NCBI GenBank assembly: GCA_026770705.1
Contig: JANJGN010000052.1
Location: forward strand, 3,534,001 to 3,598,000
Reading direction: 5' to 3'
Length of the DNA: 64,000 bases
Source: Isurus oxyrinchus
Taxonomy: Eukaryota
Positions 5,149 through 54,400 of this stretch are shown one piece after another. The position numbers and the translations under genes are program-made. Every line of letters begins with the position of its first letter. The stretch's first letter is position 1. Under the pieces are notes generated by a model. It was not told the origin of the DNA and ran no database searches. It saw only the letters and a program-made list of their open reading frames with translations.

Positions 5149-5523
5149 TTGGACTATCACAAGTGTGGAAAGGTTACACTCCAGGAGAGGTGACAGCGCA
5201 GGAAGGTTCGTGTGTACAGATTCCATGTAATTACAGTTATCCATCATATTTAGTAGCGAGATCACCAGTCGGAATCTGGTATATGAGAAGGAATTGGGAA
5301 AAATGGAATGAACGGTCTATAGCCTTTCACTCCAAGGATCATAATCGCGAGTTACCACAGTTCCACCATCGGACCCAGCTGTCTGGAGACCTGAAAGATG
5401 GCGACTGTTCCCTGATTATAAACAACATCAGACGGGAAGATGCAGGATATTATTTATTCAGCCTAGAATTTGACAACAGGAATAGATACAACGACCGTCC
5501 TGAAACCCAGCTTCACGTTTCTG
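5149..5523 (+). CDS. Siglec gene A, V-set exon V0 (essential Arg replaced by Ser)
   Basis: ctccctAG acceptor, G|GTAAGT donor, 375 nt, phase 1-1. Siglec V motifs VTAQEGSCVQIPC, GIWY, LSGDLKDGDCSLII; F strand reads YYLFSLE. Confidence 0.92.
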
Positions 5524-5689
5524 GTAAGTGCTGTGTTATAATTACTCAACAATTCACATCCAACACTCAATGGGAAATAATAGTGTTTGATTTGCTTGTT
5601 TTTTGGCCGTGTTAACCAGCGCCACTATTTTTAATGATTTGTCTATTTCTGCTCCCAGATCCATAAGCTTATTGTGTGTGATTGAATCC

Positions 5690-7520
5690 ACATCATAGCT
5701 GTAACATAAACCGAGCTGAGGGGTGATGACACCTCCCCCCTGAGTGAAGTATCTCCTCCCCACTACACCTTCCACCCCTCACACTGTCCGTGTAAACCCC
5801 CGTCCCATCTCCAGCCTCTCTTTCCCCTCCAAAGTCCTGCAACCTGTTTCCATCTCCCGAATCTGTTCCCATCTTTCCCGGAACTCCATGTTTGAATCCC
5901 TCCAATCAGGTTCCCACCCCAGCCACTGTGCTGAAACAGCTCTTATCAAGGTCACAAATGGCATCCTGTGTGACTGTGACAAAGGTCAACTTTCCCTCCT
6001 CGTCCTTCTCGATCTGTCTGCAGCCTTTGACACGCTCGACCACACCATCCTCCTCCAACACCTCTCCACTGTGGTCCAGCTGGGTGGGACTGCTCTCCCC
6101 TGGCTCCATTCTTATCCATCTCATCGTAGCCAGAGAATCACTTGCAATGGCTTTGCAGCATCATCTGAACAGTGTTAGTTTTCACCTGTCCACTGAGGAT
6201 CCCCAGCTCTACCTCACCACCACCTCTCTCGACTCCTCCACTGCTGCTAAATTATCAGGCTGCTTATCCGACATCCAGTACTGGATGGGCAGAAATTCCC
6301 TCCAATTAAATATTGGAAAGACTGAAGCCATTGTCTTCATTCCCCGCTCCAAACTCTGTTCCCTCGCTACCAACTCCATTCCTCTCCCTGGCAGCTCTCT
6401 GAGATTGAAGCCAATCTGTTCACAGCTTTGTTGTCCCATTTGATCCTGAGATGAGCTTCCGGCCTCCTATCTGCGCCCTCACTAACACCGTCTATTTCCA
6501 CCTCCGTAACATCGCACGACGTCACCCTGTCTCAGCTCATCTGCTGCTGAAACCCTCATCCACGCCTTCATTACCTCCAGTCTCGACTGTTCCAACACAC
6601 GCTCTACACTCCATAAACTTGAGGCCATCCAAAACTGCTGACCACGTCCTTACTCACACCAAGTCCCGTTCCCTTATCACCCGCTCTGCTCGATGACCGA
6701 GACTGGCTCCTGGTCAAGCAAAATGTCAACGTCCAAATTTTCATCTTTGTTTCCTCACTATCTCTGTAATCTCCTCGTCCTCCTCCAGTACCTACAACCA
6801 TCCCATTCTCTGTAACCTCTTCAAGCCTCTACCGCTTCCCTATATCTGTAAATTCATCCTGCCCAACAAACCTACCAATCTCTGCAACCTCCTCCAGCCA
6901 CTACAAACCTCCCTATTTCTGTAACTTCCTCCTGCCCCTAAAAGCTTCCCTATCTCTGTAGCCTGCTCCAGTCCTGACAACTTTCCCTGCCCCTGTAACC
7001 TGCCCCAGTCACTACAACCCTCCCGACCTCTGCAAACTCCTCCAGACCCTACACTCTCCCAATCTCTCTTAACTTTTCCAGCCCCTACAAACCTCCCTAT
7101 CACTATAACTCCTCCAATCACTACAAACCTCGCTATCTCTGTAACCTCCTCCAGCCCCTACAACCCTCCCTATCTCTGTAACCTCCTCCAGACCCACCAA
7201 CCTTCAGAGGTCTCTGCGCTCCTCCAATTCCAGCCTCTTGACCATCCCCCGATCTCAACACTCTAACATTGGTGGCCATGCCTTCAGCTGCCTGGGGACC
7301 GAGCTCTGTAATACCCTCCCTTAAGCCCTCTCCGTCCCTCACACTCACTCTCTCTCTCTCACTAACCATTTCATCCCTCTTTTAAGTTTCTCCATAACAC
7401 CGATCCCTTCTGGTCAGCTGTCGCTAATATCTCCACATGTGTCTGCGTGACATACTTTGTTTTATGACGCTCCTGTGTAGCACCTTGGGGTGATTTGTCA
7501 TGTTCAAGTTGTTGTGAAAA
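5690..7520 (+). mobile_element. L2/CR1-clade LINE fragment (RT) with ~37-bp minisatellite (6760-7200) and 3' tail
   Basis: HCAETALIKVTNGIL..LLVLLDLSAAFDTLDH and DPQLYL..LSDIQYWM..LQLNIGKTEAI are RT motifs, frameshifted. Tandem ctgtaacctcctccagcccctacaaccctccctatct units follow. Confidence 0.85.
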
Positions 7521-8927
7521 TATAAGTTGTTGCCCTTTGACCCTCGACCCCAGATTGAGTCTTATTTTTGAGGGAATGTACAACCTGCTTAGATTTCTGA
7601 CCAAAGTGTCATTTGATTATTTTTATTGAGCGAATGCCAAGCCCCGATACCGAGCGAGAGCCTCCTCATTTGCTGAGTTCAAGGTGATGAGTCAGCCCCT
7701 TAGTCCGTAGAGGGGATTCTCCTCGGTAATGTACAGCCTTGTTTGTGTCTCTCCACAAGCGCATGAGGGATTTGTACAGAGGCTGCAGCGCTGGAGGGGG
7801 TCTGCACAGGGGTCCTGGCCTGTCCTGAGCTGGTTTTAGCAAGGACCACTCTGGCCTTGGCAGCTGAAAGCCAGCCATTGGACAGACAGGGCCTGTCACA
7901 AGGAGCCTGTTAGTCACTCCCCCCCGTGTCTCCTGTGCTCGGATCCAGACCATGTTGGCTGGTGGATCTGGCTCAGGAAGGGTCCTCCCCATGGGACCCC
8001 CAGATGGAAGGTGGGTCGAGCGGGTCAGTCACTTGCATGTTTATTCTGCAGCTTTAATATTTTAAGAAGGTAAGAATGTAGGAACATAAGAAATAGGGAC
8101 AGCAGCAGGCCATTCGGCCCCTCCAGCCTGCCCTCGCTGATCTGGTTGTGGCCTTAACTCCATTTTCCTGCCTGTCCCCCAAACCCTTGACTCCCTTGTC
8201 GATCAAAAACCTGCCTCACTCAGCCTTGAGTCTATTCAATGGCCCAGCCTCCACTGCTCTCTGGGGAAGAGAATTCCACAGGCTAGCGCCCCTCTGAGAG
8301 AGGAAATTCCTCCTCATCTCAGTCTTAAATGGGAGAGTCCTCATTCCGAAACTGTGCTCCCTGGTTCTAGATTCCCCCACGAGGGGGAAACATCCTCCCA
8401 GCATCCACCCTGTCAAGCCCCCTCGGAATTGGATATGTTTCAATAAGGTCACCCCTCATTCTTCTAAACTCCAATGGATACAGGCCCAACCTGCTCAACA
8501 TTTCCTCACAGGACAAACCCTTTAATCCCAGGAATCAGCCCAGTGAAGCTTCTCTGAACTGCCTGTACACAATGATCCTGTTACAATCTCACTAACGCCC
8601 TGTGCAGCTGTTGCAAGACTTCCCTCCTTTTATACTCCATCCCTTTGCAATAAAGGCCAACATTCCACTTGCCTTCCTCATTCCGTGGTGTTCCTGAATG
8701 CTGACTTTCTGTGATTCATGTACAAGGACACCCAGATCCCTCTGTACTGCATTCTGCAGCCTGTCTCCATTTAAATAATATCCTGTTTTTCTATTCTTCC
8801 TGCCAAAATAATTTGTTGCCATTCTCCTCAGTATTGACCATCCCCCCAATTCAGCCTCATCTGTAAATTTTGAGTCTAGTGGATCCAGAAACCATCCAGA
8901 GATAAATATTGAGATTTCTCTCCCCAG

Positions 8928-9296
8928 TTGGACTGTCACAAGAGTGGAAAGGTGACACTCCACGAGAGGTGACAGCTCAGGAAGGTTCGTGTGTACAGAT
9001 TCCATGTCATTACAGTTATCCATCGTGTCTGGAAAACCAACCGCGAGGTGGACTCTGGTTTAATAATGAGAAACAGATTCCCTGGGCTCCCATTGCCTTT
9101 CACTCCAAGGATCACAGTCACGAGTTACCACGGTTCCGCCATCGGACCCGGCTGTCTGGAGACCTGAAAGATGGCGACTGTTCCCTGATTATAAACAACA
9201 TCAGACGGGAAGATGCAGGACCTTATTTTTTCAGAATAGAATTTGACAATGGTCCGAGCCATAACTATTACCCTGTAACCCAGCTTCACGTTTCTG
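8928..9296 (+). CDS. Siglec gene A, V-set exon V1 (subtype a)
   Basis: tccccAG acceptor, G|GTAAGT donor, 369 nt, open. GSCVQIPC, DCSLII and YFFRIE (essential Arg) present. Confidence 0.92.
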
Positions 9297-11230
9297 GTAA
9301 GTGCTGTGTTATAATTACTCAACAATTCTCATTCAACACTCAATGGGAATTAACACAAACTGTGACGTTTACATATTAACACAAAACACAGTTTATTATA
9401 ACACACTGTCTGATTCTCAATAACCTGGTGATAGCTTCCAGTTCAGTCCTAAAGCAATGTCTAATACTCACTTTAATATCAATGATTAAATGTGTTGACT
9501 GTGTCTATCAATGTTATCAGTTTATCCACTCCCATCAATCTCTCAAATCCTGTCTTGAAGTCTGACATATCGACAGAAGAAAGATTTACATTTCTACAGC
9601 GCCTTTCACCACCCTAGACTTCCCACCCTAAACCTCTCCCTCTCCCTCTTCCTCTCCCTCTCTCTCTCTCTCTCTCTGTCTCTTTCTCTGTCTCTCCATA
9701 ACACCGACCTCTTCTGGTCAGCTGTCGCTAATATCTACACGTGTCTGGGTGACATACTTTGTTTTATGACGCTCCTGTGTAGCACCTTGAGGTGATTTGT
9801 CATGTTAAAGTTGTTGTGAAAATATAAGTTGTTGCCCTTTGACTCTCGACCCCAGATCGAGTCTTATTTTTGAGGGAATGTACAACCTCCTTAGATTTCT
9901 GACCAAAATGTCATTTGATTATTTTTATTGAGCGAATGCCAAGCCCCGATACCGAGCGAGAGCCTCCTCATTTGCCGAGTTTAGGGTGATGAGTCAGCCC
10001 CTTAGTCCGTAGAGGGGATTCTCCTCGGTAATGAGCAGCCTTGTTTGTGTCTCTCCACAAGCGCATGAGGGATTTGTACAGAGGCTGCAGCGCTGGAGGG
10101 GGTCTGCACAGGGGTCCTGGCCTGTCCTGAGCCGGTTTTAGCAAGGACAACTCTGGCCTTGGCAGCTGAAAGCCAGCCATTGGACAGACGGGGCCTGTCA
10201 CAAGGAGCCTGTTAGTCACTCCCCCCCCGTGTCTCCTGTGCTCGGATCCAGACCATGTTGGCTGGTGGATCTGGCTCAGGAAGGGTCCTCCCCATGGGAC
10301 CCCCAGATGGAAGGTGGGTCGAGCGGGTCAGTCACTTGCATGTTTATTCTGCAGCTTTAATATTTTAAGAAGGTAAGAATGTAGGAACATAAGAAATAGG
10401 GACAGGAGCAGGCCATTCGGCCCCTCCAGCCTGCTCTCACTGATCTGGTTGTGGCCTTAACTCCATTTTCCTGCCTGTCCCCCAAACCCTTGACTCTCTT
10501 GTCGATCAAAAACCTGCCTCACTCAGCCTTGAGTCTATTCAATGGCCCAGCCTCCACTGCTCTCTGGGGAAGAGAATTCCACAGGCTAGCGCCCCTCTGA
10601 GAGAGGAAATTCCTCCTCATCTCAGTCTTAAATGGGAGAGCCCTCATTCTGAAACTGTGCTCCCTGGTTCTAGATTCCCCCACGAGGGGGAAACATCCTC
10701 CCAGCATCCACCCTGTCAAGCCCCCTCGGAATCGGATATGTTTCAATAAGGTCACCCCTCATTCTTCTAAACTCCAATGGATACAGGCCCAACCTGCTCA
10801 ACATTTCCTCACAGGACAAACCCTTTAATCCCAGGAATCAGCCCAGTGAAGCTTCTCTGAACTGCCTGTACACAATGATCCTGTTACAATCTCACTAACG
10901 CCCTGTGCAGCTGTTGCAAGACTTCCCTCCTTTTATACTCCATCCCTTTGCAATAAAGGCCAACATTCCACTTGCCTTCCTCATTCCGTGGTGTTCCTGA
11001 ATGCTGACTTTCTGTGATTCATGTACAAGGACACCCAGATCCCTCTGTACTGCATTCTGCAGCCTGTCTCCATTTAAATAATATCCTGTTTTTCTATTCT
11101 TCCTGCCAAAATAATTTGTTGCCATTCTCCTCAGTATTGACCATCCCCCCAATTCAGCCTCATCTGTAAATTTTGAGTCTAGTGGATCCACAAACCATCC
11201 AGAGATAAATATTGAGATTTCTCTCCCCAG

Positions 11231-11599
11231 TTGGACTGTCACAAGAGTGGAAAGGTGACACTCCACGAGAGGTGACAGCTCAGGAAGGTTCGTGTGTACA
11301 GATTCCATGTCATTACAGTTATCCATCGTGTCTGGAAAACCAACCGCGAGGTGGACTCTGGTTTAATAATGAGAAACAGATTCCCTGGGCTCCCATTGCC
11401 TTTCACTCCAAGGATCACAGTCACGAGTTACCACGGTTCCGCCATCGGACCCGGCTGTCTGGAGACCTGAAAGATGGCGACTGTTCCCTGATTATAAACA
11501 ACATCAGACGGGAAGATGCAGGACCTTATTTTTTCAGAATAGAATTTGACAATGGTCCGAGCCATAACTATTACCCTGTAACCCAGCTTCACGTTTCTG
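11231..11599 (+). CDS. Siglec gene A, V-set exon V2 (subtype a)
   Basis: Same protein as V1; canonical splice sites; 369 nt. Confidence 0.92.
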
Positions 11600-13537
11600 G
11601 TAAGTGCTGTGTTATAATTACTCAACAATTCACATTCAACACTCAATGGGAATTAACACAAACTGTGACGTTTACATATTAACACAAAACACAGTTTATT
11701 ATAACACACTGTCTGATTCTCAATAACCTGGTGATAGCTTCCAGTTCAGTCCTAAAGCAATGTCTAATACTCACTTTAATATCAATGATTAAATGTGTTG
11801 ACTGTGTCTATCAATGTTATCAGTTTATCCACTCCCATCAATCTCTCAAATCCTGTCTTGAAGTCTGACATATCGACAGAAGAAAGATTTACATTTCTAC
11901 AGCGCCTTTCACCACCCTAGACTTCCCACCCTAAACCTCTCCCTCTCCCTCTTCCTCTCCCTCTCTCTCTCTCTCTCTCTGTCTCTTTCTCTCTGTCTCT
12001 CCATAACACCGACCTCTTCTGGCCAGCTGTCGCTAATATCTCCACATGTGTCTGGGTGACATACTTTGTTTTATGACGCTCCTGTGTAGCACCTTGAGGT
12101 GATTTGTCATGTTAAAGTTGTTGTGAAAATATAAGTTGTTGCCCTTTGACTCTCGACCCCAGATCGAGTCTTATTTTTGAGGGAATGTACAACCTCCTTA
12201 GATTTCTGACCAAAATGTCATTTGATTATTTTTATTGAGCGAATGCCAAGCCCCGATACCGAGCGAGAGCCTCCTCATTTGCCGAGTTTAGGGTGATGAG
12301 TCAGCACCTTAGTCTGTAGAGGGGATTCTCCTCGGTAATGAGCAGCCTTGTTTGTGTCTCTCCACAAGCGCATGAGGGGTTTGTACAGAGGCTGCAGCGC
12401 TGGAGGGGGTCTGCACAGGGGTCCTGGCCTGTCCTGAGCCGGTTTTAGCAAGGACCACTCTGGCCTTGGCAGCTGAAAGCCAGCCATTGGACAGACGGGG
12501 CCTGTCACAAGGAGCCTGTTAGTCACTCCCCCCCCGTGTCTCCTGTGCTCGGATCCAGACCATGTTGGCTGGTGGATCTGGCTCAGGAAGGGTCCTCCCC
12601 ATGGGACCCCCAGATGGAAGGTGGGTCGAGCGGGTCATTCACTTGCATGTTTTTTCTGCATCTTTAATATTTTAAGAAGGTAAGAATGTAGGAACATAAG
12701 AAATAGGGACAGGAGCAGGCCATTCGGCCCCTCCAGCCTGCTCTCACTGATCTGGTTGTGGCCTTAACTCCATTTTCCTGCCTGTCCCCCAAACCCTTGA
12801 CTCCCTTGTCGATCAAAAACCTGCCTCACTCAGCCTTGAGTCTATTCAATGGCCCAGCCTCCACTGCTCTCTGGGGAAGAGAATTCCACAGGCTAGCGCC
12901 CCTCTGAGAGAGGAAATTCCTCCTCATCTCAGTCTTAAATGGGAGAGCCCTCATTCTGAAACTGTGCTCCCTGGTTCTAGATTCCCCCACGAGGGGGAAA
13001 CATCCTCCCAGCATCCACCCTGTCAAGCCCCCTCGGAATCGGATATGTTTCAATAAGGTCACCCCTCATTCTTCTAAACTCCAATGGATACAGGCCCAAC
13101 CTGCTCAACATTTCCTCACAGGACAAACCCTTTAATCCCAGGAATCAGCCCAGTGAAGCTTCTCTGAACTGCCTGTACACAATGATCCTGTTACAATCTC
13201 ACTAACGCCCTGTGTAGCTGTTGCAAGACTTCCCTCCTTTTATACTCCATCCCTTTGCAATAAAGGCCAACATTCCACTTGCCTTCCTCATTCCGTGTTG
13301 TTCCTGAATGCTGACTTTCTGTGATTCATGTACCAGGACACCCAGATCCCTCTGTACTGCATACTGCAGCCTGTCACCATTTAAATTATATCCTGTTTTT
13401 CTATTCTTCCTGACAATATAATTTATTGCCATTCTCCTCAGTATTGACCATCCCCCCAATTCAGCCTCATCTGTAAATATCGGGTTCAGTGGATCCACAA
13501 ACCATTCAGAGTTAAATATTGAGATTTCTCTCCCCAG

Positions 13538-13903
13538 CTGAACCCTCACAAGAGTGGAAAGGTGACACTCCACGAGAGGTGACAGTGCAAGAAGGTTCCT
13601 GTGTACAGATTCCATGTCATTATAGTTATCCATCATGTCTGGAAAACCAACCGCGACGTGGAGTCTGGCTTAATAATGAGGAATGGAGAACATCGTCTAT
13701 AGCCTTTCACTCCAAGGATCACAGTCACGAGTTACCACGGTTCCACCATCGGACCCGGCTGTCTGGAGACCTGAAAGATGGCGACTGTTCCCTGATTATA
13801 AACAACATCACATGGGAAGATGTAGGACCTTATTTTTTCAGAATAGAATTTGACAATGGTCCGAGCCATAACTATTACCCTGTAACCCAGGTTCACGTTT
13901 CTG
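13538..13903 (+). CDS. Siglec gene A, V-set exon V3 (subtype b)
   Basis: 366 nt, open, canonical splice sites. RGVWLNNEEWRTSSIAF, NNITWEDVG, YFFRIE. Confidence 0.92.
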
Positions 13904-15838
13904 GTAAGTGCTGTGTTATAATTACTCAACAATTCACATTCAACACTCAATGGGAATTAACACAAACTGTGACGTTTACATATTAACACAAAACACAGTT
14001 TATTATAACACACTGTCTGATTCTCAATAACCTGGTGATAGCTTCCAGTTCAGTCCTAAAGCAATGTCTAATACTCACTTTAATATCAATGATTAAATGT
14101 GTTGACTGTGTCTATCAATGTTATCAGTTTATCCACTCCCATCAATCTCTCAAATCCTGTCTTGAAGTCTGACATATCGACAGAAGAAAGATTTACATTT
14201 CTACAGCGCCTTTCACCACCCTAGACTTCCCACCCTAAACCTCTCCCTCTCCCTCTTCCTCTCCCTCTCTCTCTCTCTCTCTCTGTCTCTTTCTCTCTGT
14301 CTCTCCATAACACCGACCTCTTCTGGTCAGCTGTCGCTAATATCTACACGTGTCTGGGTGACATACTTTGTTTTATGACGCTCCTGTGTAGCACCTTGAG
14401 GTGATTTGTCATGTTAAAGTTGTTGTGAAAATATAAGTTGTTGCCCTTTGACTCTCGACCCCAGATCGAGTCTTATTTTTGAGGGAATGTACAACCTCCT
14501 TAGATTTCTGACCAAAATGTCATTTGATTATTTTTATTGAGCGAATGCCAAGCCCCGATACCGAGCGAGAGCCTCCTCATTTGCCGAGTTTAGGGTGATG
14601 AGTCAGCACCTTAGTCTGTAGAGGGGATTCTCCTCGGTAATGAGCAGCCTTGTTTGTGTCTCTCCACAAGCGCATGAGGGGTTTGTACAGAGGCTGCAGC
14701 GCTGGAGGGGGTCTGCACAGGGGTCCTGGCCTGTCCTGAGCCAGTTTTAGCAAGGACAACTCTGGCCTTGGCAGCTGAAAGCCAGCCATTGGACAGACGG
14801 GGCCTGTCACAAGGAGCCTGTTAGTCACTCCCCCCCGTGTCTCCTGTGCTCGGATCCAGACCATGTTGGCTGGTGGATCTGGCTCAGGAAGGGTCCTCCC
14901 CATGGGACCCCCAGATGGAAGGTGGGTCGAGCGGGTCATTCACTTGCATGTTTTTTCTGCAGCTTTAATATTTTAAGAAGGTAAGAATGTAGGAACATAA
15001 GAAATAGGGACAGGAGCAGGCCATTCGGCCCCTCCAGCCTGCCCTCACTGATCTGGTTGTGGCCTTAACTCCATTTTCCTGCCTGTCCCCCAAACCCTTG
15101 ACTCTCTTGTCGATCAAAAACCTGCCTCACTCAGCCTTGAGTCTATTCAATGGCCCAGCCTCCACTGCTCTCTGGGGAAGAGAATTCCACAGGCTAGCGC
15201 CCCTCTGAGAGAAGAAATTCCTCCTCATCTCAGTCTTAAATGGGAGAGCCCTCATTCTGAAACTGTGCTCCCTGGTTCTAGATTCCCCCACGAGGGGGAA
15301 ACATCCTCCCAGCATCCACCCTGTCAAGCCCCCTCGGAATCGGATATGTTTCAATAAGGTCACCCCTCATTCTTCTAAACTCCAATGGATACAGGCCCAA
15401 CCTGCTCAACATTTCCTCACAGGACAAACCCTTTAATCCCAGGAATCAGCCCAGTGAAGCTTCTCTGAACTGCCTGTACACAATGATCCTGTTACAATCT
15501 CACTAACGCCCTGTGCAGCTGTTGCAAGACTTCCCTCCTTTTATACTCCATCCCTTTGCAATAAAGGCCAACATTCCACTTGCCTTCCTCATTCCGTGTT
15601 GTTCCTGAATGCTGACTTTCTGTGATTCATGTACCAGGACACCCAGATCCCTCTGTACTGCATACTGCAGCCTGTCACCATTTAAATTATATCCTGTTTT
15701 TCTATTCTTCCTGACAATATAATTTATTGCCATTCTCCTCAGTATTGACCATCCCCCCAATTCAGCCTCATCTGTAAATATCGGGTTCAGTGGATCCACA
15801 AACCATTCAGAGTTAAATATTGAGATTTCTCTCCCCAG

Positions 15839-16204
15839 CTGAACCCTCACAAGAGTGGAAAGGTGACACTCCACGAGAGGTGACAGTGCAGGAAGGTTCC
15901 TGTGTACAGATTCCATGTCATTATAGTTATCCATCATGTCTGGAAAACCAACCGCGACGTGGAGTCTGGCTTAATAATGAGGAATGGAGAACATCGTCTA
16001 TAGCCTTTCACTCCAAGGATCACAGTCACGAGTTACCACGGTTCCACCATCGGACCCGGCTGTCTGGAGACCTGAAAGATGGCGACTGTTCCCTGATTAT
16101 AAACAACATCACATGGGAAGATGCAGGACCTTATTTTTTCAGAATAGAATTTGACAATGGTCCGAGCCATAACTATTACCCTGTAACCCAGGTTCACGTT
16201 TCTG
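15839..16204 (+). CDS. Siglec gene A, V-set exon V4 (subtype b)
   Basis: 366 nt, open, canonical splice sites; YFFRIE. Confidence 0.92.
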
Positions 16205-18139
16205 GTAAGTGCTGTGTTATAATTACTCAACAATTCGCATTCAACACTCAATGGGAATTAACACAAACTGTGACGTTTACATATTAACACAAAACACAGT
16301 TTATTATAACACACTGTCTGATTCTCAATAACCTGGTGATAGCTTCCAGTTCAGTCCTAAAGCAATGTCTAATACTCACTTTAATATCAATGATTAAATG
16401 TGTTGACTGTGTCTATCAATGTTATCAGTTTATCCACTCCCATCAATCTCTCAAATCCTGTCTTGAAGTCTGACATATCGACAGAAGAAAGATTTACATT
16501 TCTACAGCGCCTTTCACCACCCTAGACTTCCCACCCTAAACCTCTCCCTCTCCCTCTTCCTCTCCCTCTCTCTCTCTCTCTCTCTGTCTCTTTCTCTCTG
16601 TCTCTCCATAACACCGACCTCTTCTGGTCAGCTGTCGCTAATATCTACACGTGTCTGGGTGACATACTTTGTTTTATGACGCTCCTGTGTAGCACCTTGA
16701 GGTGATTTGTCATGTTAAAGTTGTTGTGAAAATATAAGTTGTTGCCCTTTGACTCTCGACCCCAGATCGAGTCTTATTTTTGAGGGAATGTACAACCTCC
16801 TTAGATTTCTGACCAAAATGTCATTTGATTATTTTTATTGAGCGAATGCCAAGCCCCGATACCGAGCGAGAGCCTCCTCATTTGCCGAGTTTAGGGTGAT
16901 GAGTCAGCACCTTAGTCTGTAGAGGGGATTCTCCTCGGTAATGAGCAGCCTTGTTTGTGTCTCTCCACAAGCGCATGAGGGGTTTGTACAGAGGCTGCAG
17001 CGCTGGAGGGGGTCTGCACAGGGGTCCTGGCCTGTCCTGAGCCGGTTTTAGCAAGGACAACTCTGGCCTTGGCAGCTGAAAGCCAGCCATTGGACAGACG
17101 GGGCCTGTCACAAGGAGCCTGTTAGTCACTCCCCCCCGTGTCTCCTGTGCTCGGATCCAGACCATGTTGGCTGGTGGATCTGGCTCAGGAAGGGTCCTCC
17201 CCATGGGACCCCCAGATGGAAGGTGGGTCGAGCGGGTCAGTCACTTGCATGTTTTTTCTGCAGCTTTAATATTTTAAGAAGGTAAGAATGTAGGAACATA
17301 AGAAATAGGGACAGGAGCAGGCCATTCGGCCCCTCCAGCCTGCTCTCACTGATCTGGTTGTGGCCTTAACTCCATTTTCCTGCCTGTCCCCCAAACCCTT
17401 GACTCTCTTGTCGATCAAAAACCTGCCTCACTCAGCCTTGAGTCTATTCAATGGCCCAGCCTCCACTGCTCTCTGGGGAAGAGAATTCCACAGGCTAGCG
17501 CCCCTCTGAGAGAGGAAATTCCTCCTCATCTCAGTCTTAAATGGGAGAGCCCTCATTCTGAAACTGTGCTCCCTGGTTCTAGATTCCCCCACGAGGGGGA
17601 AACATCCTCCCAGCATCCACCCTGTCAAGCCCCCTCGGAATCGGATATGTTTCAATAAGGTCACCCCTCATTCTTCTAAACTCCAATGGATACAGGCCCA
17701 ACCTGCTCAACATTTCCTCACAGGACAAACCCTTTAATCCCAGGAATCAGCCCAGTGAAGCTTCTCTGAACTGCCTGTACACAATGATCCTGTTACAATC
17801 TCACTAACGCCCTGTGCAGCTGTTGCAAGACTTCCCTCCTTTTATACTCCATCCCTTTGCAATAAAGGCCAACATTCCACTTGCCTTCCTCATTCCGTGT
17901 TGTTCCTGAATGCTGACTTTCTGTGATTCATGTACCAGGACACCCAGATCCCTCTGTACTGCATACTGCAGCCTGTCACCATTTAAATTATATCCTGTTT
18001 TTCTATTCTTCCTGACAATATAATTTATTGCCATTCTCCTCAGTATTGACCATCCCCCCAATTCAGCCTCATCTGTAAATATCGGGTTCAGTGGATCCAC
18101 AAACCATTCAGAGTTAAATATTGAGATTTCTCTCCCCAG

Positions 18140-18505
18140 CTGAACCCTCACAAGAGTGGAAAGGTGACACTCCACGAGAGGTGACAGTGCAGGAAGGTTC
18201 CTGTGTACAGATTCCATGTCATTATAGTTATCCATCATGTCTGGAAAACCAACCGCGACGTGGAGTCTGGCTTAATAATGAGGAATGGAGAACATCGTCT
18301 ATAGCCTTTCACTCCAAGGATCACAGTCACGAGTTACCACGGTTCCACCATCGGACCCGGCTGTCTGGAGACCTGAAAGATGGCGACTGTTCCCTGATTA
18401 TAAACAACATCACATGGGAAGATGCAGGACCTTATTTTTTCAGAATAGAATTTGACAATGGTCCGAGCCATAACTATTACCCTGTAACCCAGGTTCACGT
18501 TTCTG
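18140..18505 (+). CDS. Siglec gene A, V-set exon V5 (subtype b)
   Basis: 366 nt, same protein as V4. Confidence 0.92.
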
Positions 18506-20441
18506 GTAAGTGCTGTGTTATAATTACTCAACAATTCGCATTCAACACTCAATGGGAATTAACACAAACTGTGACGTTTACATATTAACACAAAACACAG
18601 TTTATTATAACACACTGTCTGATTCTCAATAACCTGGTGATAGCTTCCAGTTCAGTCCTAAAGCAATGTCTAATACTCACTTTAATATCAATGATTAAAT
18701 GTGTTGACTGTGTCTATCAATGTTATCAGTTTATCCACTCCCATCAATCTCTCAAATCCTGTCTTGAAGTCTGACATATCGACAGAAGAAAGATTTACAT
18801 TTCTACAGCGCCTTTCACCACCCTAGACTTCCCACCCTAAACCTCTCCCTCTCCCTCTTCCTCTCCCTCTCTCTCTCTCTCTCTCTGTCTCTTTCTCTCT
18901 GTCTCTCCATAACACCGACCTCTTCTGGTCAGCTGTCGCTAATATCTACACGTGTCTGGGTGACATACTTTGTTTTATGACGCTCCTGTGTAGCACCTTG
19001 GAGTGATTTGTCATGTTAAAGTTGTTGTGAAAATATAAGTTGTTGCCCTTTGACTCTCGACCCCAGATCGAGTCTTATTTTTGAGGGAATGTACAACCTC
19101 CTTAGATTTCTGACCAAAATGTCATTTGATTATTTTTATTGAGCGAATGCCAAGCCCCGATACCGAGCGAGAGCCTCCTCATTTGCCGAGTTTAGGGTGA
19201 TGAGTCAGCACCTTAGTCTGTAGAGGGGATTCTCCTCGGTAATGAGCAGCCTTGTTTGTGTCTCTCCACAAGCGCATGAGGGGTTTGTACAGAGGCTGCA
19301 GCGCTGGAGGGGGTCTGCACAGGGGTCCTGGCCTGTCCTGAGCCGGTTTTAGCAAGGACAACTCTGGCCTTGGCAGCTGAAAGCCAGCCATTGGACAGAC
19401 GGGGCCTGTCACAAGGAGCCTGTTAGTCACTCCCCCCCCGTGTCTCCTGTGCTCGGATCCAGACCATGTTGGCTGGTGGATCTGGCTCAGGAAGGGTCCT
19501 CCCCATGGGACCCCCAGATGGAAGGTGGGTCGAGCGGGTCAGTCACTTGCATGTTTTTTCTGCAGCTTTAATATTTTAAGAAGGTAAGAATGTAGGAACA
19601 TAAGAAATAGGGACAGGAGCAGGCCATTCGGCCCCTCCAGCCTGCTCTCACTGATCTGGTTGTGGCCTTAACTCCATTTTCCTGCCTGTCCCCCAAACCC
19701 TTGACTCTCTTGTCGATCAAAAACCTGCCTCACTCAGCCTTGAGTCTATTCAATGGCCCAGCCTCCACTGCTCTCTGGGGAAGAGAATTCCACAGGCTAG
19801 CGCCCCTCTGAGAGAGGAAATTCCTCCTCATCTCAGTCTTAAATGGGAGAGCCCTCATTCTGAAACTGTGCTCCCTGGTTCTAGATTCCCCCACGAGGGG
19901 GAAACATCCTCCCAGCATCCACCCTGTCAAGCCCCCTCGGAATCGGATATGTTTCAATAAGGTCACCCCTCATTCTTCTAAACTCCAATGGATACAGGCC
20001 CAACCTGCTCAACATTTCCTCACAGGACAAACCCTTTAATCCCAGGAATCAGCCCAGTGAAGCTTCTCTGAACTGCCTGTACACAATGATCCTGTTACAA
20101 TCTCACTAACGCCCTGTGTAGCTGTTGCAAGACTTCCCTCCTTTTATACTCCATCCCTTTGCAATAAAGGCCAACATTCCACTTGCCTTCCTCATTCCGT
20201 GTTGTTCCTGAATGCTGACTTTCTGTGATTCATGTACCAGGACACCCAGATCCCTCTGTACTGCATACTGCAGCCTGTCACCATTTAAATTATATCCTGT
20301 TTTTCTATTCTTCCTGACAATATAATTTATTGCCATTCTCCTCAGTATTGACCATCCCCCCAATTCAGCCTCATCTGTAAATATCGGGTTCAGTGGATCC
20401 ACAAACCATTCAGAGTTAAATATTGAGATTTCTCTCCCCAG

Positions 20442-20807
20442 CTGAACCCTCACAAGAGTGGAAAGGTGACACTCCACGAGAGGTGACAGTGCAGGAAGGT
20501 TCCTGTGTACAGATTCCATGTCATTATAGTTATCCATCATGTCTGGAAAACCAACCGCGACGTGGAGTCTGGCTTAATAATGAGGAATGGAGAACATCGT
20601 CTATAGCCTTTCACTCCAAGGATCACAGTCACGAGTTACCACGGTTCCACCATCGGACCCGGCTGTCTGGAGACCTGAAAGATGGTGACTGTTCCCTGAT
20701 TATAAACAACATCAGACGGGAAGATGCAGGACCTTATTTTTTCAGAATAGAATTTGACAATGGTCCGAGCCATAACTATTACCCTGTAACCCAGGTTCAC
20801 GTTTCTG
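20442..20807 (+). CDS. Siglec gene A, V-set exon V6 (b/a mosaic)
   Basis: 366 nt, open. Subtype-b 5' half with the a/V0-type NNIRREDAG. Confidence 0.92.
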
Positions 20808-21535
20808 GTAAGTGCTGTGTTATAATTACTCAACAATTCACATTCAACACTCAATGGGAAACAACACAAACTGTGACGTTTACATATTAACACAAAACAC
20901 AGCTTATTATAACACACTGTCTGATTCTCAATAACCTGGTGATCGCTTCCAGTTCAGTCCTAAAGCAACCTCTAATACTCACTTTAATATCAATGATTAA
21001 ATATATTGACTGTGTCCATCAATGTTATCAGGTTATCCACTCCCATCAATCTCTCTAATCCTGTCTCGAAGTCTGACTTAGCGACAGAAGAAAGATTCAC
21101 ATTTCTGTAGCACTTTTCACCACCTCAGCATGGACCAAATCACTTCACAGCCAATGAGTTGATTCCTGAATTTTAGTTACTATTGTAATGTGGGAAACAC
21201 AGCAACCAATTTGCGCACAGCAAGCTCCCACAAATTGCAAAGTAAAAAATGGCCTAGATCGCTGAGGGACTGATGGGTTAGTGCACTCCAAACTCTGGTC
21301 TGCTCCACCACCCTCACCCACTATTATCAGTTCAAGTGTCTCGGAGTGAACGTGTATTAAGCTGAGAGACAGAAACACCAAAGTCTCAAAGCAGGAAATT
21401 CTCTCCTAATCATTGTAACCTCTCAGATCTGATATCATCCTTGTAAAAGTGCTTTTTCTTGTGGGACTGTGATTTCTATTTGAACTGATGCTTCACGTTA
21501 TATTTCTCTAAAAGGATCCATTCTCTGTCTGTTAG

Positions 21536-21832
21536 ATTTCACAGATAAACCCATGATATTCCCTGCTGAAATTATTGCAGGAAAGCGTGTGGATGTAAGC
21601 TGCACCTTCAACACAACGTGCAATGGAACAGCAGCACCTGTCTTAACCTGGGACACTCCCACTGACGTACCTGTATCAGTCTCAAACACTGTAACTCAGC
21701 ATGGTGTCACTCTGACCTATACTTCTGTTCTGACCCTGATCCCATCACTCAAACACCACAGACACAATCTCAGCTGCAGAGTGAGATATCCATCTGTTTC
21801 ATCGGAGCGGACCCTCGTACTAACTATGCAAG
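21536..21832 (+). CDS. Siglec gene A, C2-set domain 2 exon
   Basis: gttAG acceptor, G|GTAAGT donor, 297 nt, phase 1-1. DFTDKPMIFP..VSCTFNTTCNG..LTW..SVLTLIP..HHRHNLSCRV matches Siglec domain 2, including the extra interdomain Cys. Confidence 0.92.
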
Positions 21833-22155
21833 GTAAGTACGGACACCCTTCATTCTACATCAGCACTCCCTCAGCGCTGACCCTCTGACAGTGCAGCCCG
21901 TTCTCAGTGTCCACATTCTCATGCCTCTCAAAGTGCTTCACAGTCGATAGAAGTTAACTGATCTTTATTTGATTGTTGCTGAATGAAGAGACAAGCTGTC
22001 TAAACTTTGCATCTCACACACATTATTTTCCATGGCAACACCTCCTCCAATCAGAGACCACTTGCTGATTAACCAGCACTCTCTTCCCTTTAAATATAAA
22101 TTGTTGTTCACTTTCTGTTGGTAAACCTGCAATCTGTCTTGTTGAGTCCAGTCCT

Positions 22156-22307
22156 GACATCTGAATATCACAATGAACAGAACAAGTTCCAACAATGAGC
22201 TGTGGTTGGTGATTCCTCACGTTACATCCAGGGACACTGGAGACTATCAGTGTGCTCAGAGAATGAACATGGAGCAGTGGAGGGGTTCATAACCATCACT
22301 GTGGAAC
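22156..22307 (+). pseudogene. Broken C2 (domain 3) exon remnant of gene A
   Basis: Near-identical to the 3' half of the gene B C2 exons (MNRTSSNNELWLVIPHVTSRDTGDYQC..EHGAVEGFITITVE). The 5' half is missing and there is a 1-nt deletion after YQC. Confidence 0.85.
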
Positions 22308-23421
22308 GTTAGTTAAGACAAACTTCAACATCTCTCTCAGATTGAAACACTACAAAAACACACATAAATATACAGCCTTAAATAGACACCTGCATACACA
22401 CAATCCCACATCTATGAGCACACACAAAGACACACTCACAAACAAACACACTAGCACATACTCCCCTGTGGATTACCTGACCTCCCTCAGTGCTGCACCG
22501 GAGAGTTGACCTGGATTCTGGGATTTGTGTTCCCTTTCATATTTATGGAAGAATATGGAAATTGCAAAGTCTATTACAGACACTCAGATGCACAGAGATA
22601 CTCACAGATACTCTCTGCCTCTCCAACTCTCTATCCTACTTTAAGAACCTTCCTGAAATCTAACTCTTTGACCAGTCACCAGTCCCAATTCCTCCTTACG
22701 TGATTTTGTGTGAAATTTTGTTTGAGTATCTGAGAGTAAGAGGGAAGTGGAGAGGTTTAGGAAGGGAATTCCTGTTGCTGAAAAGCTTACATCAAGTTCT
22801 CAGCTTTCCAGTGCCCATTTTTCACATGATGTCCATGTTCATAATGGGGATTGCCTATGTAAACATCACGCTGTAGTTACACTCTCCCACCAGTGGTAGC
22901 ACGGTAACACTTAACCCTTGCATCTCCAAGCTTTTCAAGCAATTTCACTTCCTAATTTCCTACTATTCACCTCAACCATTCCCTGTGGGAGCGAGTTCCA
23001 TATTCTCCCCTCTCTCTGGGTAAAGATTGGAACTGTTTATTAAGCGGGGGGTGTAAGTCCGTGGGGGAGTCCATCCCGATACTGCCCGATTCGCACACAC
23101 GGCTGAGATGGATTTTCACCCGGCACTAAAGGTTTCCAGAATTTTCTACAGCACAATCCTGTACACAGCGATGGAGAGAAACATTGGACAGGGAGTCCAA
23201 CAGCACAATGATCCATTCTCACCAATGTTCCACGCTAAGGAGAAAGTTCCGATTGTCCACTCTTAGAGTGTTTACAATGAAAACATTCATTCCACATTGA
23301 ATCCCAGTGGATGGGTCAATATTACAGCAAATGTTGCAGTGATATGAAGCTTGATTGTTCAGCCAGAGTGAGAGATTTAAAGCGGAGAGTCAGTGATGAT
23401 TTCTTTCTGTGTGTTCTCTAG

Positions 23422-23561
23422 ACAGTGGAGGAGAGATTCTGCACGTGATCCTGATCCTGGGAATACGAGCTGTGATATTCCTTGTGGCTGTGGTTATCAC
23501 TATCACTGGAGTCTGTGTCTGGGAGAGACAAACAGTGAAAGGAAGTCGACAGACTGTTTGA
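23422..23561 (+). CDS. Siglec gene A, terminal transmembrane exon with intramembrane Arg and short tail
   Basis: ttctctAG acceptor. Phase-1 reading gives (D)SGGEILHVILILGIRAVIFLVAVVITITGVCVWERQTVKGSRQTV*; this frame is not in the ORF track. Confidence 0.82.
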
Positions 23562-40761: not shown

Positions 40762-41030
40762 CACGTCACTGTCTTCAGCTCTGAGACTGTCAATCCTCAC
40801 CAAACAATTCTTCCCTTCCAAGTCGCCGATTATTTTAGCACGTCCCACGAATGTGGGATCTTTGGTGTATGTGATGGTATATTTCCATCTATACCAATAT
40901 TTATACCAAGCTCCGTGCAGTGCTGTGTAAGAGTGGGAAGGAAAGTCAAAGCTACACGGAATAACCACACAAGAGCTGCTGATGGCCCTCCGAGGCAGCG
41001 CCTTCATAGACCATCCCTCTGACGTCACTC
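40762..41030 (-). pseudogene. Siglec gene C, MAG/sialoadhesin-like V exon truncated before strand F
   Basis: cctttcAG acceptor. GVTSEGWSM..SSCVVIPCSFDFP..LHGAWY..FVGRAKIIGDLEGKNCLVRIDSLRAEDSD then runs into Gypsy gag sequence; stop at 40744. Confidence 0.85.
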
Positions 41031-41089
41031 CTGAAAGGCAACAAGGGAGGGGACTGAACATCAAAAAGCAGAATATTACTTCAATGGAG

Positions 41090-41530
41090 AGAAGTATGCG
41101 GTACAGAGGGATCTGGGTGTCCTTGTACATGAATCACAGAAAGTCAGCATTCAGGAACACCACGGAATGAGGAAGGCAAGTGGAATGTTGGCCTTTATTG
41201 CAAAGGGATGGAGTATAAAAGGAGGGAAGTCTTGCTACAACTGCACAGGGCGTTGGTGAGATTGTATCAGGAGCAGTGTGTACAGTTCTGGTCTCCTTAC
41301 TTAGGGAGGGATAGACTCTGCATTGGAGGCAGTTCAGAGGAGGTTCACTGGGCTGATTCCTGGGATGAAGGGGGTTTGTCTTATGAGGAAATGTTGAGCA
41401 GGTTGGGCCCTGTATCCATTGGAGTTTAGAAGAATGAGAGGTGATCTTATTGAAACATATAAGATTCTGAGGTGGTGGGGGGTTTGACAGGGTGGATGCT
41501 GAGGGGATGTTACCCCTTGTGGGGGAATCC
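41090..41530 (+). mobile_element. CR1 LINE fragment in gene C intron 1
   Basis: MEYKRREVLLQLHRALVR..CVQFWSPYL RT-tail motif; close reverse-complement match to the array CR1 piece (~8375-8755). Confidence 0.85.
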
Positions 41531-54318: not shown

Positions 54319-54400
54319 CTGGTGCTTCACAGAGAGTGGACTGGGGGTCAATACAATGTCACTGGTCCCTGAAACTCTCTCCTCCATCGCTGTCTTTCTC
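54319..54400 (-). CDS. Siglec gene B, cytoplasmic exon
   Basis: ttgcAG acceptor, CAG|GTACAG donor, 82 nt, phase 2-0: RKTAMEERVSGTSDIVLTPSPLSVKHQ. Bridges the TM and ITIM exons in frame. Confidence 0.85.

What the first reader, a model, noticed from the sequence alone, without database searches (positions are those of the whole stretch)
5149..23561. Siglec with seven tandem V-set exons feeding one C2 exon and one TM exon
Seen: seven open phase 1-1 V exons with canonical splice sites, six retaining YFFR. I found no leader, C2 or TM exon inside the 2.3-kb units, so these are exon duplications rather than gene duplications. Established: Siglecs normally have one N-terminal V-set domain (Siglec-XII has two). 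Inference: either a ~1000-aa multivalent sialic-acid receptor or a cassette of alternatively spliced binding domains. I know of no described Siglec with either architecture.
Basis: partly seen in the sequence, partly recalled or inferred. Interest (0 to 1): 0.9.

Follow-up and report, generated by a model that had tools for sequence, protein, structure and literature searches.

The report
Shark Siglec gene with seven V-exons
A shark immune-receptor gene of the sialic-acid-lectin (Siglec) family really does carry seven intact copies of its sugar-binding exon in a row, an extreme case of a multi-head layout that automatic annotation already records in other sharks and rays (two to five heads) but that we found described in no paper.

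Summary
Seven open, phase 1-1 V-set exons with identical strong splice sites lie at 5149-20807. Six sit in a 2.3-kb tandem array and keep the Siglec YFFR arginine. One C2 exon (21536-21832) and one Arg-containing TM exon (23422-23561) follow. No leader, C2 or TM exon lies inside the units.

The V domains are clearly Siglec: they pass the Pfam V-set and Ig_CD22 cut-offs, and the top 17 solved-structure hits are all Siglecs. Hepcidin genes flank the locus, as next to mammalian MAG.

RNA-like runs of the same species show the splices V to C2 and C2 to TM, plus one V-to-V junction. Close paralogs prevent firm assignment to this gene. Copy number could not be checked because only contigs were available.

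The architecture is not unique. RefSeq models of sharks and rays have 2-5 contiguous V-sets, and rays keep four position-specific V's. A catshark model joins five or more V's to the same Arg-TM. This scan had already found two-V Siglec genes elsewhere in this genome and judged them ordinary.

Best reading: an activating, multi-V Siglec-like receptor enlarged by recent unequal crossing-over and patched by gene conversion. The V exons are spliced in series, in varying number.

It is a new variant of a known kind, of moderate-to-high interest.

The parts
5149..5523 (+). V0: first V-set exon, 375 nt, phase 1-1. It is of the 'first-V' type (3 Cys, no BC-loop Cys). The sialic-acid Arg is replaced (YLFSLE).
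   Evidence: Pfam V-set 51 bits and Ig_CD22 40.9 bits. It groups with the first V of Cetorhinus P0182 and Carcharodon P0177 (98/93).
5524..7325 (+). V0-V1 intron segment that is not part of the repeat unit. It holds retroelement-like ORFs (5744-6696) and a 37-bp satellite (6779-7202).
   Evidence: The ORFs have no Pfam hit; the retroelement call is by eye only.
7326..21124 (+). Tandem array: one partial and five full 2.3-kb units (intron plus V exon), then the first 317 nt of a further unit. Every internal junction joins a truncated SINE-like repeat (...CACCACC) to a CT-rich stretch, e.g. at 9613|9614.
8928..9296 (+). V1 exon, 369 nt, YFFRIE, BC-loop Cys (YPSC)
11231..11599 (+). V2 exon, 369 nt. 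It is identical to V1 although their upstream introns differ by 3.1%.
13538..13903 (+). V3 exon, 366 nt, 'AEPSQEWKG' internal-V type start, different C-C' loop (NNEEWRTSS)
15839..16204 (+). V4 exon, 366 nt, identical to V5
18140..18505 (+). V5 exon, 366 nt. RNA-like contigs carry the end of a V exon directly in front of this type of acceptor, and join a V donor to the C2 acceptor.
17900..18306 (+). Gene-conversion-like patch, shown here in unit 5; the same stretch occurs in units 3, 4 and 6. About 400 nt cover the acceptor and the 5' half of the exon, at ~9.5% divergence from unit 2 against ~0.8% in the rest of the unit.
20442..20807 (+). V6 exon, 366 nt, last V before the C2 exon
21536..21832 (+). 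C2-set exon, 297 nt, phase 1-1, three Cys
   Evidence: Pfam C2-set_2 36.7 bits. Boundaries come from the GT..AG joints 18505->21536 and 21832->23422 in runs X5 and X4, which are absent from DNA run X1.
22158..22307 (+). Remnant of an I-set exon (…NNELWLVIPHVTSRDTGDYQC / ENEHGAVEGFITITVE), frameshifted and truncated at the 5' end in the window. The C2->TM splice of organism A skips it. A contig of the related organism B joins it to the TM exon.
23422..23561 (+). Last exon: stalk, a TM helix with an Arg (ILILGIRAVIFLVAVV), a 13-residue tail, and the stop at 23559-23561
   Evidence: The same TM is found in S. torazame P0006 and P0167.

Best explanation
This is a real gene of an elasmobranch-specific branch of the Siglec family. 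It lies in the hepcidin-linked Siglec cluster and is of the activating type: an Arg sits in the TM helix, the tail is very short, and an ITAM adaptor is presumably recruited (inferred).

History of the ectodomain (shown):
- The ancestral ectodomain had two V-set exons, V0 plus a V1-type exon, as in its lamniform relatives.
- One duplication of a 2.3-kb intron+exon unit created a new junction inside a SINE-like repeat.
- Unequal crossing-over then raised the number of V1-type exons to six.
- A ~400-bp gene-conversion patch from a paralog gave V3-V6 a different N-terminus and C-C' loop.

Splicing and function (inferred):
- All seven exons are phase 1-1 with identical strong splice sites, so the default product strings several V domains in series. 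That gives up to seven V's and about 1017 aa, six of them with the sialic-acid arginine.
- In-frame skipping of one or more V exons would vary the number of V's.
- Each V that follows another V carries a fourth cysteine. This cysteine could take the inter-domain disulfide that a Siglec V normally makes with its C2 neighbour.
- The likely function is high-avidity, long-reach sialoglycan recognition coupled to an activating signal. The receptor would be the counterpart of ITIM-bearing paralogs in the same cluster.
For: Siglec identity:
- Pfam V-set and Ig_CD22 are above their cut-offs for V0, V1 and V6, and C2-set_2 for the C2 exon.
- The top 17 PDB sequence hits are all Siglecs, and YFFR aligns on the YFFR of Siglec-5.
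- A hepcidin exon lies at 62510-62623, with an inverted copy near 31.0 kb. HAMP, USF2 and MAG are neighbours in mammals (PMC4453067).

Array structure and history.
- Synonymous divergence between V2 and V3-6 is 0.11-0.12, against intron divergence of 0.012-0.016. dN/dS is 0.33-0.44. This pattern indicates conversion, not selection.
- Reads of two samples of the species carry both unit types and the unit-6-specific base.

Splicing:
- GT..AG joints V donor->C2 and C2->TM appear in X5 and X4 but not in DNA run X1.
- A loose end TTCACGTTTCT (the 3' end of a V exon) sits in front of the V3-6-type acceptor.
- A leader end matching MIGKSYFLLSLLQ is joined to a V1/2-like exon.

Relatives:
- RefSeq models have 2 (19 models), 3 (7), 4 (4) and 5 (1) contiguous V-sets.
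- S. torazame P0167 has five or more V's, a C2 and the same Arg-TM.
- S. canicula isoforms differ by one V exon and in which first V they use.
- In Mobula and Hypanus each of the four V's pairs with the V at the same position in the other species, with support of at least 98/95. The multi-V order is therefore old and maintained.
- V0 groups with the first V's and V1/V2 with the second V's of lamniform two-V genes.

Cysteine: the BC-loop Cys is present in 26/31 V's that follow another V and in 0/23 first or only V's. V0 has 3 Cys and V1-V6 have 4.
Against: - No read-level proof shows that several V exons of this gene sit in one molecule. The V-to-V junction is a single contig with an 11-nt overhang.
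- All runs were contigs laid at 90% likeness or more, and the genome holds many close paralogs.
- The leader->V contigs break away from V6 at the Cys codon. They therefore probably come from a single-V paralog (my reading).
- The leader exon is not in the window.
- V3-V6 differ by only 0.2-0.6%, so their intactness says little about selection.
- V0 has lost the Arg and sits on a long branch.
- The Cys-position link is not significant once kinship is allowed for: 4 independent pairs, none contrary, p 0.125-0.5.
- Copy number in the assembly is unverified.
- RefSeq models are predictions, and P0167 contains an intron-like read-through.
Confidence: 0.5

Rival explanations
1. Alternative-cassette gene. 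The array is real, but each mRNA takes only one V exon (or V0 plus one). The array then offers alternative binding heads: the V1/2 type against the V3-6 type, which differ in the C-C' loop, a loop that sets specificity in mammalian Siglecs (own knowledge).
For: - Two exon types differ mainly in the N-terminus and the C-C' loop.
- A V donor is joined directly to C2 and a leader directly to a V1/2-like exon in RNA-like contigs.
- S. canicula isoforms X2 and X3 use different first V exons.
Against: - There is no feature that would enforce exclusivity: introns are 1.9 kb, sites are canonical GT-AG and identical, and exons are in frame, so there is no NMD penalty.
- Four of the six array exons are nearly identical (V4 = V5), which gives no choice to make.
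- V1-V6 have an even Cys count that fits a position behind another V.
- Relatives have contiguous multi-V models, and a V-to-V junction was seen.
Confidence: 0.2
2. Neutral, very recent copy-number expansion. The working gene is the ancestral two-V form. The extra units are a young, possibly polymorphic segmental amplification without selected function, and the gene may even be decaying: V0 has lost its Arg and one I-set exon is degenerate.
For: - Units 3-6 differ by 0.2-0.6%, with too few changes to show constraint.
- V0 has lost the Arg.
- The I-set exon remnant is frameshifted.
- Some read variants fit no assembled unit, which suggests variation between individuals.
- Null alleles are common for the activating Siglec-14 and Siglec-16 in humans (PMC6288428).
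Against: - Multi-V arrays recur in catsharks, houndsharks, basking shark and rays, and are kept position by position in rays.
- A catshark model combines five or more V's with the same Arg-TM.
- The V1 and V2 exons are identical although their introns differ by 3.1%, which points to homogenisation or constraint on the exon.
- Extra in-frame exons with strong splice sites would still be spliced in.
Confidence: 0.2
3. Assembly artefact in copy number. The tandem array exists but has fewer (or more) units than the six assembled.
For: - Units are 99.4-99.8% alike over 2.3 kb, which is a hard case for assemblers.
- No raw reads could be laid, so neither depth nor spanning reads were checked.
Against: - No two units are identical. 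The differences are substitutions rather than homopolymer indels (U4/U5: 5; U5/U6: 7).
- Three unit types (U1/2, U3-5, U6) are seen in short-read contigs of DNA run X1, and the U1/2 and U3-5 types in the RNA-like runs X5/X4 of a second sample, S2.
- There are no N runs in the array.
Confidence: 0.1

Closest known systems
Elasmobranch RefSeq models named 'sialic acid-binding Ig-like lectin 12/8/13/14' or 'pIgR-like': S. torazame P0167, S. canicula P0168/P0001, Mustelus P0171/P0172, Cetorhinus P0175/P0182, Carcharodon P0177, Mobula P0173, Hypanus P0003
   Same: - The relatives share the leader MIGKSYFLLSLLQ.
- V-sets are contiguous, each with the Siglec Arg.
- They share the C2 exon (DFTDKP…; 86-90% identical in the lamniform models).
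- P0167 and P0006 have the same Arg-TM.
- V0 and V1 are orthologous to the two V's of P0177 and P0182.

   Different: - The window has seven V exons against at most five contiguous ones in any model.
- Six of them are a young 2.3-kb array.
- The closest lamniform models (P0177, P0182) have two V's, and P0177 has an ITIM tail instead of the Arg-TM.
- These models are predictions that I found described in no paper.
Human/primate Siglec-XII (SIGLEC12)
   Same: It has more than one V-set domain at the N-terminus of a Siglec (two V-sets; PMC6288428). In humans the Arg of the binding site is lost (PMC12654080 abstract), as it is in V0 here.
   Different: Siglec-XII has two V's, not seven. It is an inhibitory ITIM receptor and a mammalian CD33-related gene, so its doubling is almost certainly of independent origin (inference).
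Siglec-14 and Siglec-16 (activating members of the paired receptors Siglec-5/14 and 11/16)
   Same: - A charged residue in the TM and a short tail.
- An activating counterpart of ITIM paralogs in the same cluster.
- V-region exchange with paralogs by gene conversion (PMC6288428; patch).
   Different: They have a single V-set. The adaptor pairing here is inferred only, and the inhibitory partner of this gene was not identified.
Polymeric Ig receptor (pIgR)
   Same: A chain of several V-type Ig domains in one ectodomain. NCBI even named P0167 'pIgR-like', and pIgR appears among the weaker PDB hits.
   Different: The V domains here have the Siglec Cys pattern and the YFFR Arg and score far better against Siglecs (E 1e-15 against 7e-9, partial). 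The gene is not a pIgR.
Sialoadhesin (Siglec-1)
   Same: A very long Siglec ectodomain, thought to project the binding site away from the cell surface (own knowledge).
   Different: Sialoadhesin gets its length from 16 C2-set domains behind one V. Here the length comes from repeated binding domains.

Membership tests
Siglec family (I-type lectins) | V-set Ig domain of the Siglec type | tested here: met
   Pfam V-set 47-51 bits (cut-off 26) and Ig_CD22 38-42 bits (cut-off 27) for V0, V1 and V6. The top 17 PDB hits are all Siglecs, E 1.5e-15 to 3e-12.
Siglec family (I-type lectins) | Conserved F-strand arginine that binds the sialic-acid carboxylate | tested here: met
   YFFRIE in V1-V6 aligns on YFFRVE of Siglec-5. 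Not met in V0 (YLFSLE).
Siglec family (I-type lectins) | Cysteine pattern: B- and E-strand Cys plus a further Cys for the disulfide to the next domain | tested here: met
   GSCVQIPC aligns with GLCVLVPC, and GDCSL with KNCSL, of Siglec-5. The C2 exon has three Cys. This is at sequence level only; no bond was shown.
Siglec family (I-type lectins) | C2-set domain(s) behind the V, then a single TM with an ITIM tail or a charged TM residue | tested here: met
   C2-set_2 36.7 bits (cut-off 21). The TM exon holds an Arg and a 13-residue tail. C2->TM is spliced in RNA-like runs.
Siglec family (I-type lectins) | Binds sialylated glycans | not testable with these tools
   Needs a recombinant ectodomain and glycan arrays.
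Siglec family (I-type lectins) | Genomic neighbourhood of the conserved Siglecs (MAG/CD22 next to HAMP and USF2) | tested here: met
   Hepcidin exon at 62510-62623, Pfam 31.6 bits (cut-off 27), and an inverted copy near 31.0 kb. The mammalian neighbourhood is taken from PMC4453067. CD22 adjacency rests on my own knowledge.
CD33-related Siglecs of mammals | Orthology or clade membership with mammalian CD33-related genes | tested here: inconclusive
   The best PDB hits are Siglec-5/7/8/CD33, but MAG (2e-13) and sialoadhesin (3e-12) are close behind. No tree with mammalian Siglecs was built. The literature holds that fish lack CD33-related Siglecs (PMC7226832).
Elasmobranch multi-V Siglec-like subfamily (RefSeq models) | Two or more contiguous V-set exons behind one leader, first-V type followed by later-V type | tested here: met
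   V0 groups with the first V's and V1/V2 with the second V's of P0177 and P0182. V3-V6 are sister to the internal V's of Scyliorhinus.
Elasmobranch multi-V Siglec-like subfamily (RefSeq models) | Family leader exon (MIGKSYFLLSLLQ, phase 1) | tested here: inconclusive
   Not in the window. A matching leader end is joined to a V1/2-like exon in X5 contigs, but these may come from a paralog.
Paired activating Siglecs (Siglec-14/16 type) | Ectodomain kept similar to an inhibitory partner by gene conversion; signals through an ITAM adaptor via the charged TM residue | tested here: inconclusive
   A conversion-like patch is shown, the TM has an Arg, and ITIM paralogs lie in the cluster. The partner and the adaptor were not identified.

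The most novel reading that the evidence does not exclude
The main product is a single polypeptide of about 1000 aa with seven V-set domains in series, six of them active sialic-acid sites, chained by V-to-V disulfides and wired to an activating adaptor. This would be a multivalent 'lectin rod' whose number of heads changes quickly through unequal crossing-over, and probably differs between individuals. It would be the extreme of an undescribed, elasmobranch-wide class of multi-head Siglecs, in a lineage said to lack CD33-like Siglecs.
Probability: 0.3. Interest if true: 0.8.

Novelty: new variant of a known kind. Interest (0 to 1): 0.6.

Why it matters
Textbook Siglecs have one sugar-binding V domain, with Siglec-XII's two as the oddity. 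Fish are also said to have only Siglec-1, CD22, MAG and Siglec-15 (PMC7226832).

Three things make this locus worth attention:
- Sharks and rays hold an expanded, hepcidin-linked cluster of Siglec-like receptors with ITIM or Arg-TM signalling ends.
- These receptors carry 2-7 binding domains in series, and the layout is kept position by position in rays.
- If the heads are used together, this is a natural experiment in tuning lectin avidity and reach by exon copy number, and a clean case of exon-array evolution (duplication junction, unequal crossing-over, conversion patch).

The idea is directly testable with long-read cDNA and recombinant ectodomains.

The value is tempered in two ways. The layout is already visible in public automatic annotation, and its use in this particular gene is not yet shown.

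Tried and rejected
- **Leader exon.** A scan for ATG + hydrophobic run + phase-1 donor found nothing convincing. The 22-mer from the loose end had 0 matches at up to 3 mismatches. The family leader peptide had none at up to 4 substitutions. The leader lies outside the window.
- **Orthologous loci.** No genomic comparison of arrays between species was possible.
- **Copy number from depth.** All four runs were Logan contigs, so depth is meaningless. The only raw-read run listed was of another organism.
- **Short protein fragments spanning V-V junctions.** A search with V5 gave only 3 hits, all single-V models of other sharks.
- **Positive selection between V1/2 and V3-6.** Rejected: dN/dS is 0.33-0.44 and dS is about 8 times the intron divergence, which indicates conversion.
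- **Cys-position covariation.** The raw counts are striking. The kinship-aware test has only 4 independent pairs and is not significant, so I keep this as a hint only.
- **Leader->V1/2-like junction as proof that V0 is skipped.** Rejected as unsafe, because those contigs diverge from the window's exons at the Cys codon and fit a single-V paralog better.
- **Retroelement ORFs in the introns.** No Pfam hit.
- **First hepcidin regex.** It found nothing; direct translation did.
- **Literature.** I found no description of multi-V Siglecs in cartilaginous fish.
- **Joined spliced model.** Exons were searched one by one by reference.

Full report
**What is there**

The window looks like elasmobranch DNA. 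The 33-bp 'CTCCCTCAGTACTGACCCTC…' repeat family is scattered through it, and all close protein relatives are from sharks and rays.

Seven V-set exons lie between 5149 and 20807 on the + strand:
- V0 5149-5523 (375 nt)
- V1 8928-9296 and V2 11231-11599 (369 nt)
- V3 13538-13903, V4 15839-16204, V5 18140-18505 and V6 20442-20807 (366 nt)

Every exon is a multiple of three and phase 1-1. Each has the acceptor …ttctctcccc(t)ag and the donor G|gtaagtgc. V1-V6 read YFFRIE; V0 reads YLFSLE.

A single C2-set exon (21536-21832) and a last exon (23422-23561) follow. The last exon encodes a stalk, a TM helix with an arginine (ILILGIRAVIFLVAVV) and a 13-residue tail. Their borders are fixed by the spliced joints.

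No leader, C2 or TM exon lies inside the repeat units, and no leader lies anywhere in the window. A degenerate I-set exon remnant lies at 22158-22307. The leader must lie upstream of the window.

**Is it a Siglec?**

Yes, by every sequence test I could run.
- V0, V1 and V6 pass the Pfam cut-offs for V-set and for Ig_CD22. The C2 exon passes C2-set_2.
- Against all solved structures, the 17 best hits are Siglec-5, -7, -8, CD33, MAG, Siglec-10 and sialoadhesin (E 1.5e-15 to 3e-12).
- The alignment puts GSCVQIPC on GLCVLVPC, GDCSL on KNCSL and YFFRIE on YFFRVE of Siglec-5.
- Two hepcidin exon-3 copies flank the region, at 62510-62626 (+) and about 31024-31140 (-). The + copy passes the Pfam Hepcidin cut-off. 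In mammals HAMP, USF2, the FFAR genes and MAG are neighbours (PMC4453067). That CD22 lies there too is my own knowledge.
- A second Siglec-like gene lies on the minus strand at 53-59 kb, with three near-identical I-set exons, a TM and an ITIM-type tail.

**How the array arose**

A 2.3-kb unit (intron plus V exon) runs from 7326 to 20807, and its first 317 nt are repeated once more up to 21124.

After V6 a SINE-like repeat continues intact. In every internal unit the same repeat is cut after …CACCACC and joined to a CT-rich stretch, for example at 9613|9614. One duplication therefore created the junction, and unequal crossing-over multiplied it.

Divergence between units:

| Comparison | Intron | Exon |
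|---|---|---|
| Units 3-6 among themselves | 0.2-0.6% | 0-1.4% |
| Unit 2 vs units 3-6 | 1.2-1.6% | 7-8% |
| Unit 1 vs unit 2 | 3.1% | identical |

- The excess between unit 2 and units 3-6 sits in about 400 nt that cover the acceptor and the 5' half of the exon.
- There dS is 0.11-0.12 and dN/dS is 0.33-0.44. This is a conversion tract from a diverged paralog, not positive selection.
- The patch changes the N-terminus (VGLSQ to AEPSQ) and the C-C' loop (NNEKQIPWAP to NNEEWRTSS).
- Paralogs with that loop exist in Carcharodon (P0264).

**Is the array real?**

- No two units are identical, and the differences are substitutions.
- Contigs of DNA run X1 (sample S1) and of RNA-like runs X5/X4 (sample S2) carry the unit-1/2 bases at positions where the laid reference has the unit-3-6 bases. 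X1 also carries the base specific to unit 6.
- Several read variants fit none of the six assembled units. They could be alleles, further units or paralogs.
- Copy number itself could not be tested, because all usable runs were contigs.

**Expression and splicing**

- Runs X5 and X4 (same species, a second sample) hold GT..AG joints 18505->21536 (V donor to C2) and 21832->23422 (C2 to the Arg-TM exon). DNA run X1 does not. These runs therefore contain RNA, and the C2 and TM exons are used as predicted. The I-set remnant is skipped.
- One X5 contig has the last 11 nt of a V exon (TTCACGTTTCT) directly in front of the V3-6-type acceptor at 18139/18140. That is a V-to-V splice.
- Three X5 contigs join …TTCCTCCTGTCACTTCTCCAAG to TTGGACTG…, the start of a V1/2-like exon. 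Translated, this is …FLLSLLQ|VGL, the end of the family leader MIGKSYFLLSLLQ.

Caveats:
- Contigs were laid at 90% likeness or more.
- The genome has many close paralogs.
- The leader-bearing contigs leave the window's sequence at the Cys codon, so they fit a single-V paralog better.
- The V-to-V evidence is one contig.
- V0 was not in the laid stretch.
- In the related organism B, a contig joins the I-set remnant (22045-22307, with a T that the window lacks behind 22254) to the TM exon.

**Relatives**

A search of 1.8 billion representatives with V1 gave 32 proteins below 1e-30. Many had several V matches. They are RefSeq models named Siglec-12, -8, -13 or -14, CD33-like, MAG-like or pIgR-like. 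They come from Scyliorhinus, Mustelus, Cetorhinus, Carcharodon, Chiloscyllium, Rhincodon, Hemiscyllium, Mobula, Hypanus and others.

Counting V domains with an HMM of the window's exons gave:

| Contiguous V's | Number of models |
|---|---|
| 2 | 19 |
| 3 | 7 |
| 4 | 4 |
| 5 | 1 |

- S. torazame P0167 has five contiguous V's, an intron-like read-through, a partial sixth V, the C2 and the same Arg-TM as the window.
- S. canicula isoform X1 has four V's. Isoforms X2 and X3 have three and use different first V's.
- In the tree, V0 groups with the first V of Cetorhinus P0182 and Carcharodon P0177 (98/93).
- V1/V2 group with their second V's and with the second V's of orectolobiform genes (99/93).
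- V3-V6 are sister to the internal V's of Scyliorhinus (97/92).
- In rays each of the four V positions of Mobula pairs with the same position of Hypanus (at least 98/95), on long branches. The multi-V order is therefore old and has been kept, which is hard to explain if only one V were used.
- The window's species is none of those in the database (86-90% identity to the best hits).

**A structural hint for serial use**

A Siglec V has three cysteines. Two form the intra-domain bond and one bonds to the next domain (own knowledge; 2ZG2-type structures).
- In the public models a fourth cysteine in the B-C loop (YPSC) is present in 26 of 31 V's that follow another V, and in none of 23 first or only V's.
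- V0 has three Cys, V1-V6 have four and the C2 exon has three. A V0-…-V6-C2 chain would therefore leave no cysteine unpaired. A leader-Vx-C2 product would leave one free.
- Allowing for kinship, only four independent contrasts exist. All are in the expected direction or neutral, but the result is not significant. I treat this as a hint.

**Verdict on mechanism**

Shown:
- A seven-exon V array is present in a Siglec-family gene with a C2 exon and an Arg-TM exon.
- It arose by tandem duplication, unequal crossing-over and a conversion patch.
- The V->C2 and C2->TM splices are used in RNA of the species.
- V-V splicing occurs in the family.
- Multi-V relatives are widespread and old.

Inferred:
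- Several or all of the seven V's are spliced in series in this gene, with in-frame skipping giving variable numbers.
- The Arg recruits an ITAM adaptor.
- The receptor is the activating counterpart of ITIM paralogs. This would parallel Siglec-14 and Siglec-16, which also exchange V regions with their partners by gene conversion (PMC6288428).

**Novelty**

- The literature I could search describes one V per Siglec, two in Siglec-XII (PMC6288428). It describes only four conserved Siglecs in fish, without CD33-like ITIM receptors (PMC7226832). I found nothing on multi-V Siglecs in cartilaginous fish.
- The layout is nevertheless already recorded by automatic annotation. This scan had already met two-V Siglec genes elsewhere in this genome, and a follow-up judged them ordinary.
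- Seven V exons is the largest number seen here.
- The position-specific conservation in rays, the conversion patch and the cysteine pattern are new supporting points.
- I rate it a new variant of a known kind, with interest 0.6.

**Limits**

- Read laying and the look-up of sequencing runs allow one call each, and both were used.

Noticed in passing
window 31024-31140 (-) and 62510-62626 (+): Two hepcidin exon-3 copies in inverted orientation (…CRFCCNCCNWREPNETCGLCCRY*). They differ in a few residues at the processing site. The + copy passes the Pfam Hepcidin cut-off. This suggests a large inverted duplication in the window.
   Followed up: partly
window 53025-59158 (-): A second Siglec-like gene on the minus strand. 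It has three near-identical I-set exons (58475-58759, 57410-57712, 56345-56659; period about 1.05 kb), a TM at 55461-55577 and an ITIM-type tail at 53025-53294. Its V exons must lie beyond the window's end. This is the same exon-array process acting on a C2/I-set exon.
   Followed up: partly
window 40768-41000 (-), and 41064-41529 (-): A divergent V-set-like exon (…CVVIPCSFDFP…GDLEGKNCLVRIDSLRAEDSD…) with a stop before the F strand. Next to it lies a stretch 81% identical to positions 1377-1797 of the 2.3-kb unit, probably a shared transposable element.
   Followed up: partly
window 22158-22307 (+): I-set exon remnant in the C2-TM intron. The window lacks a T behind 22254 that contigs in all four runs carry (every contig there in X4 and X17, about a third of the depth in X5 and X1). 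About 19 nt are also missing further upstream relative to paralogs. A contig of organism B splices 22307 to 23422, so the exon may still be used in the sister species.
   Followed up: partly
window 21767: All four runs, including DNA run X1, read C where the window has A (Asn->Thr in …HHRHNLSC, which removes an N-L-S sequon). This is either an allele private to the assembled individual or reads coming from a paralog.
   Followed up: no
window 18341, 18650, 18667, 20595, 20598: Read variants that match none of the six assembled units. They could be alleles, additional units in other individuals, or paralogs.
   Followed up: partly
public proteins P0010, P0030, P0023, P0051: Teleost 'sialoadhesin-like' and axolotl 'titin-like' models have 6-12 weak matches to the V exon. 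P0010 and P0030 repeat with a period of about 190-200 aa, and P0023 has matches 160 aa apart. P0051 has seven contiguous V-like domains. Repeated V-type domains in Siglec-like models may not be confined to elasmobranchs.
   Followed up: no
window 45286-49479: Four N runs (130-329 nt) in an AT-rich stretch.
   Followed up: no
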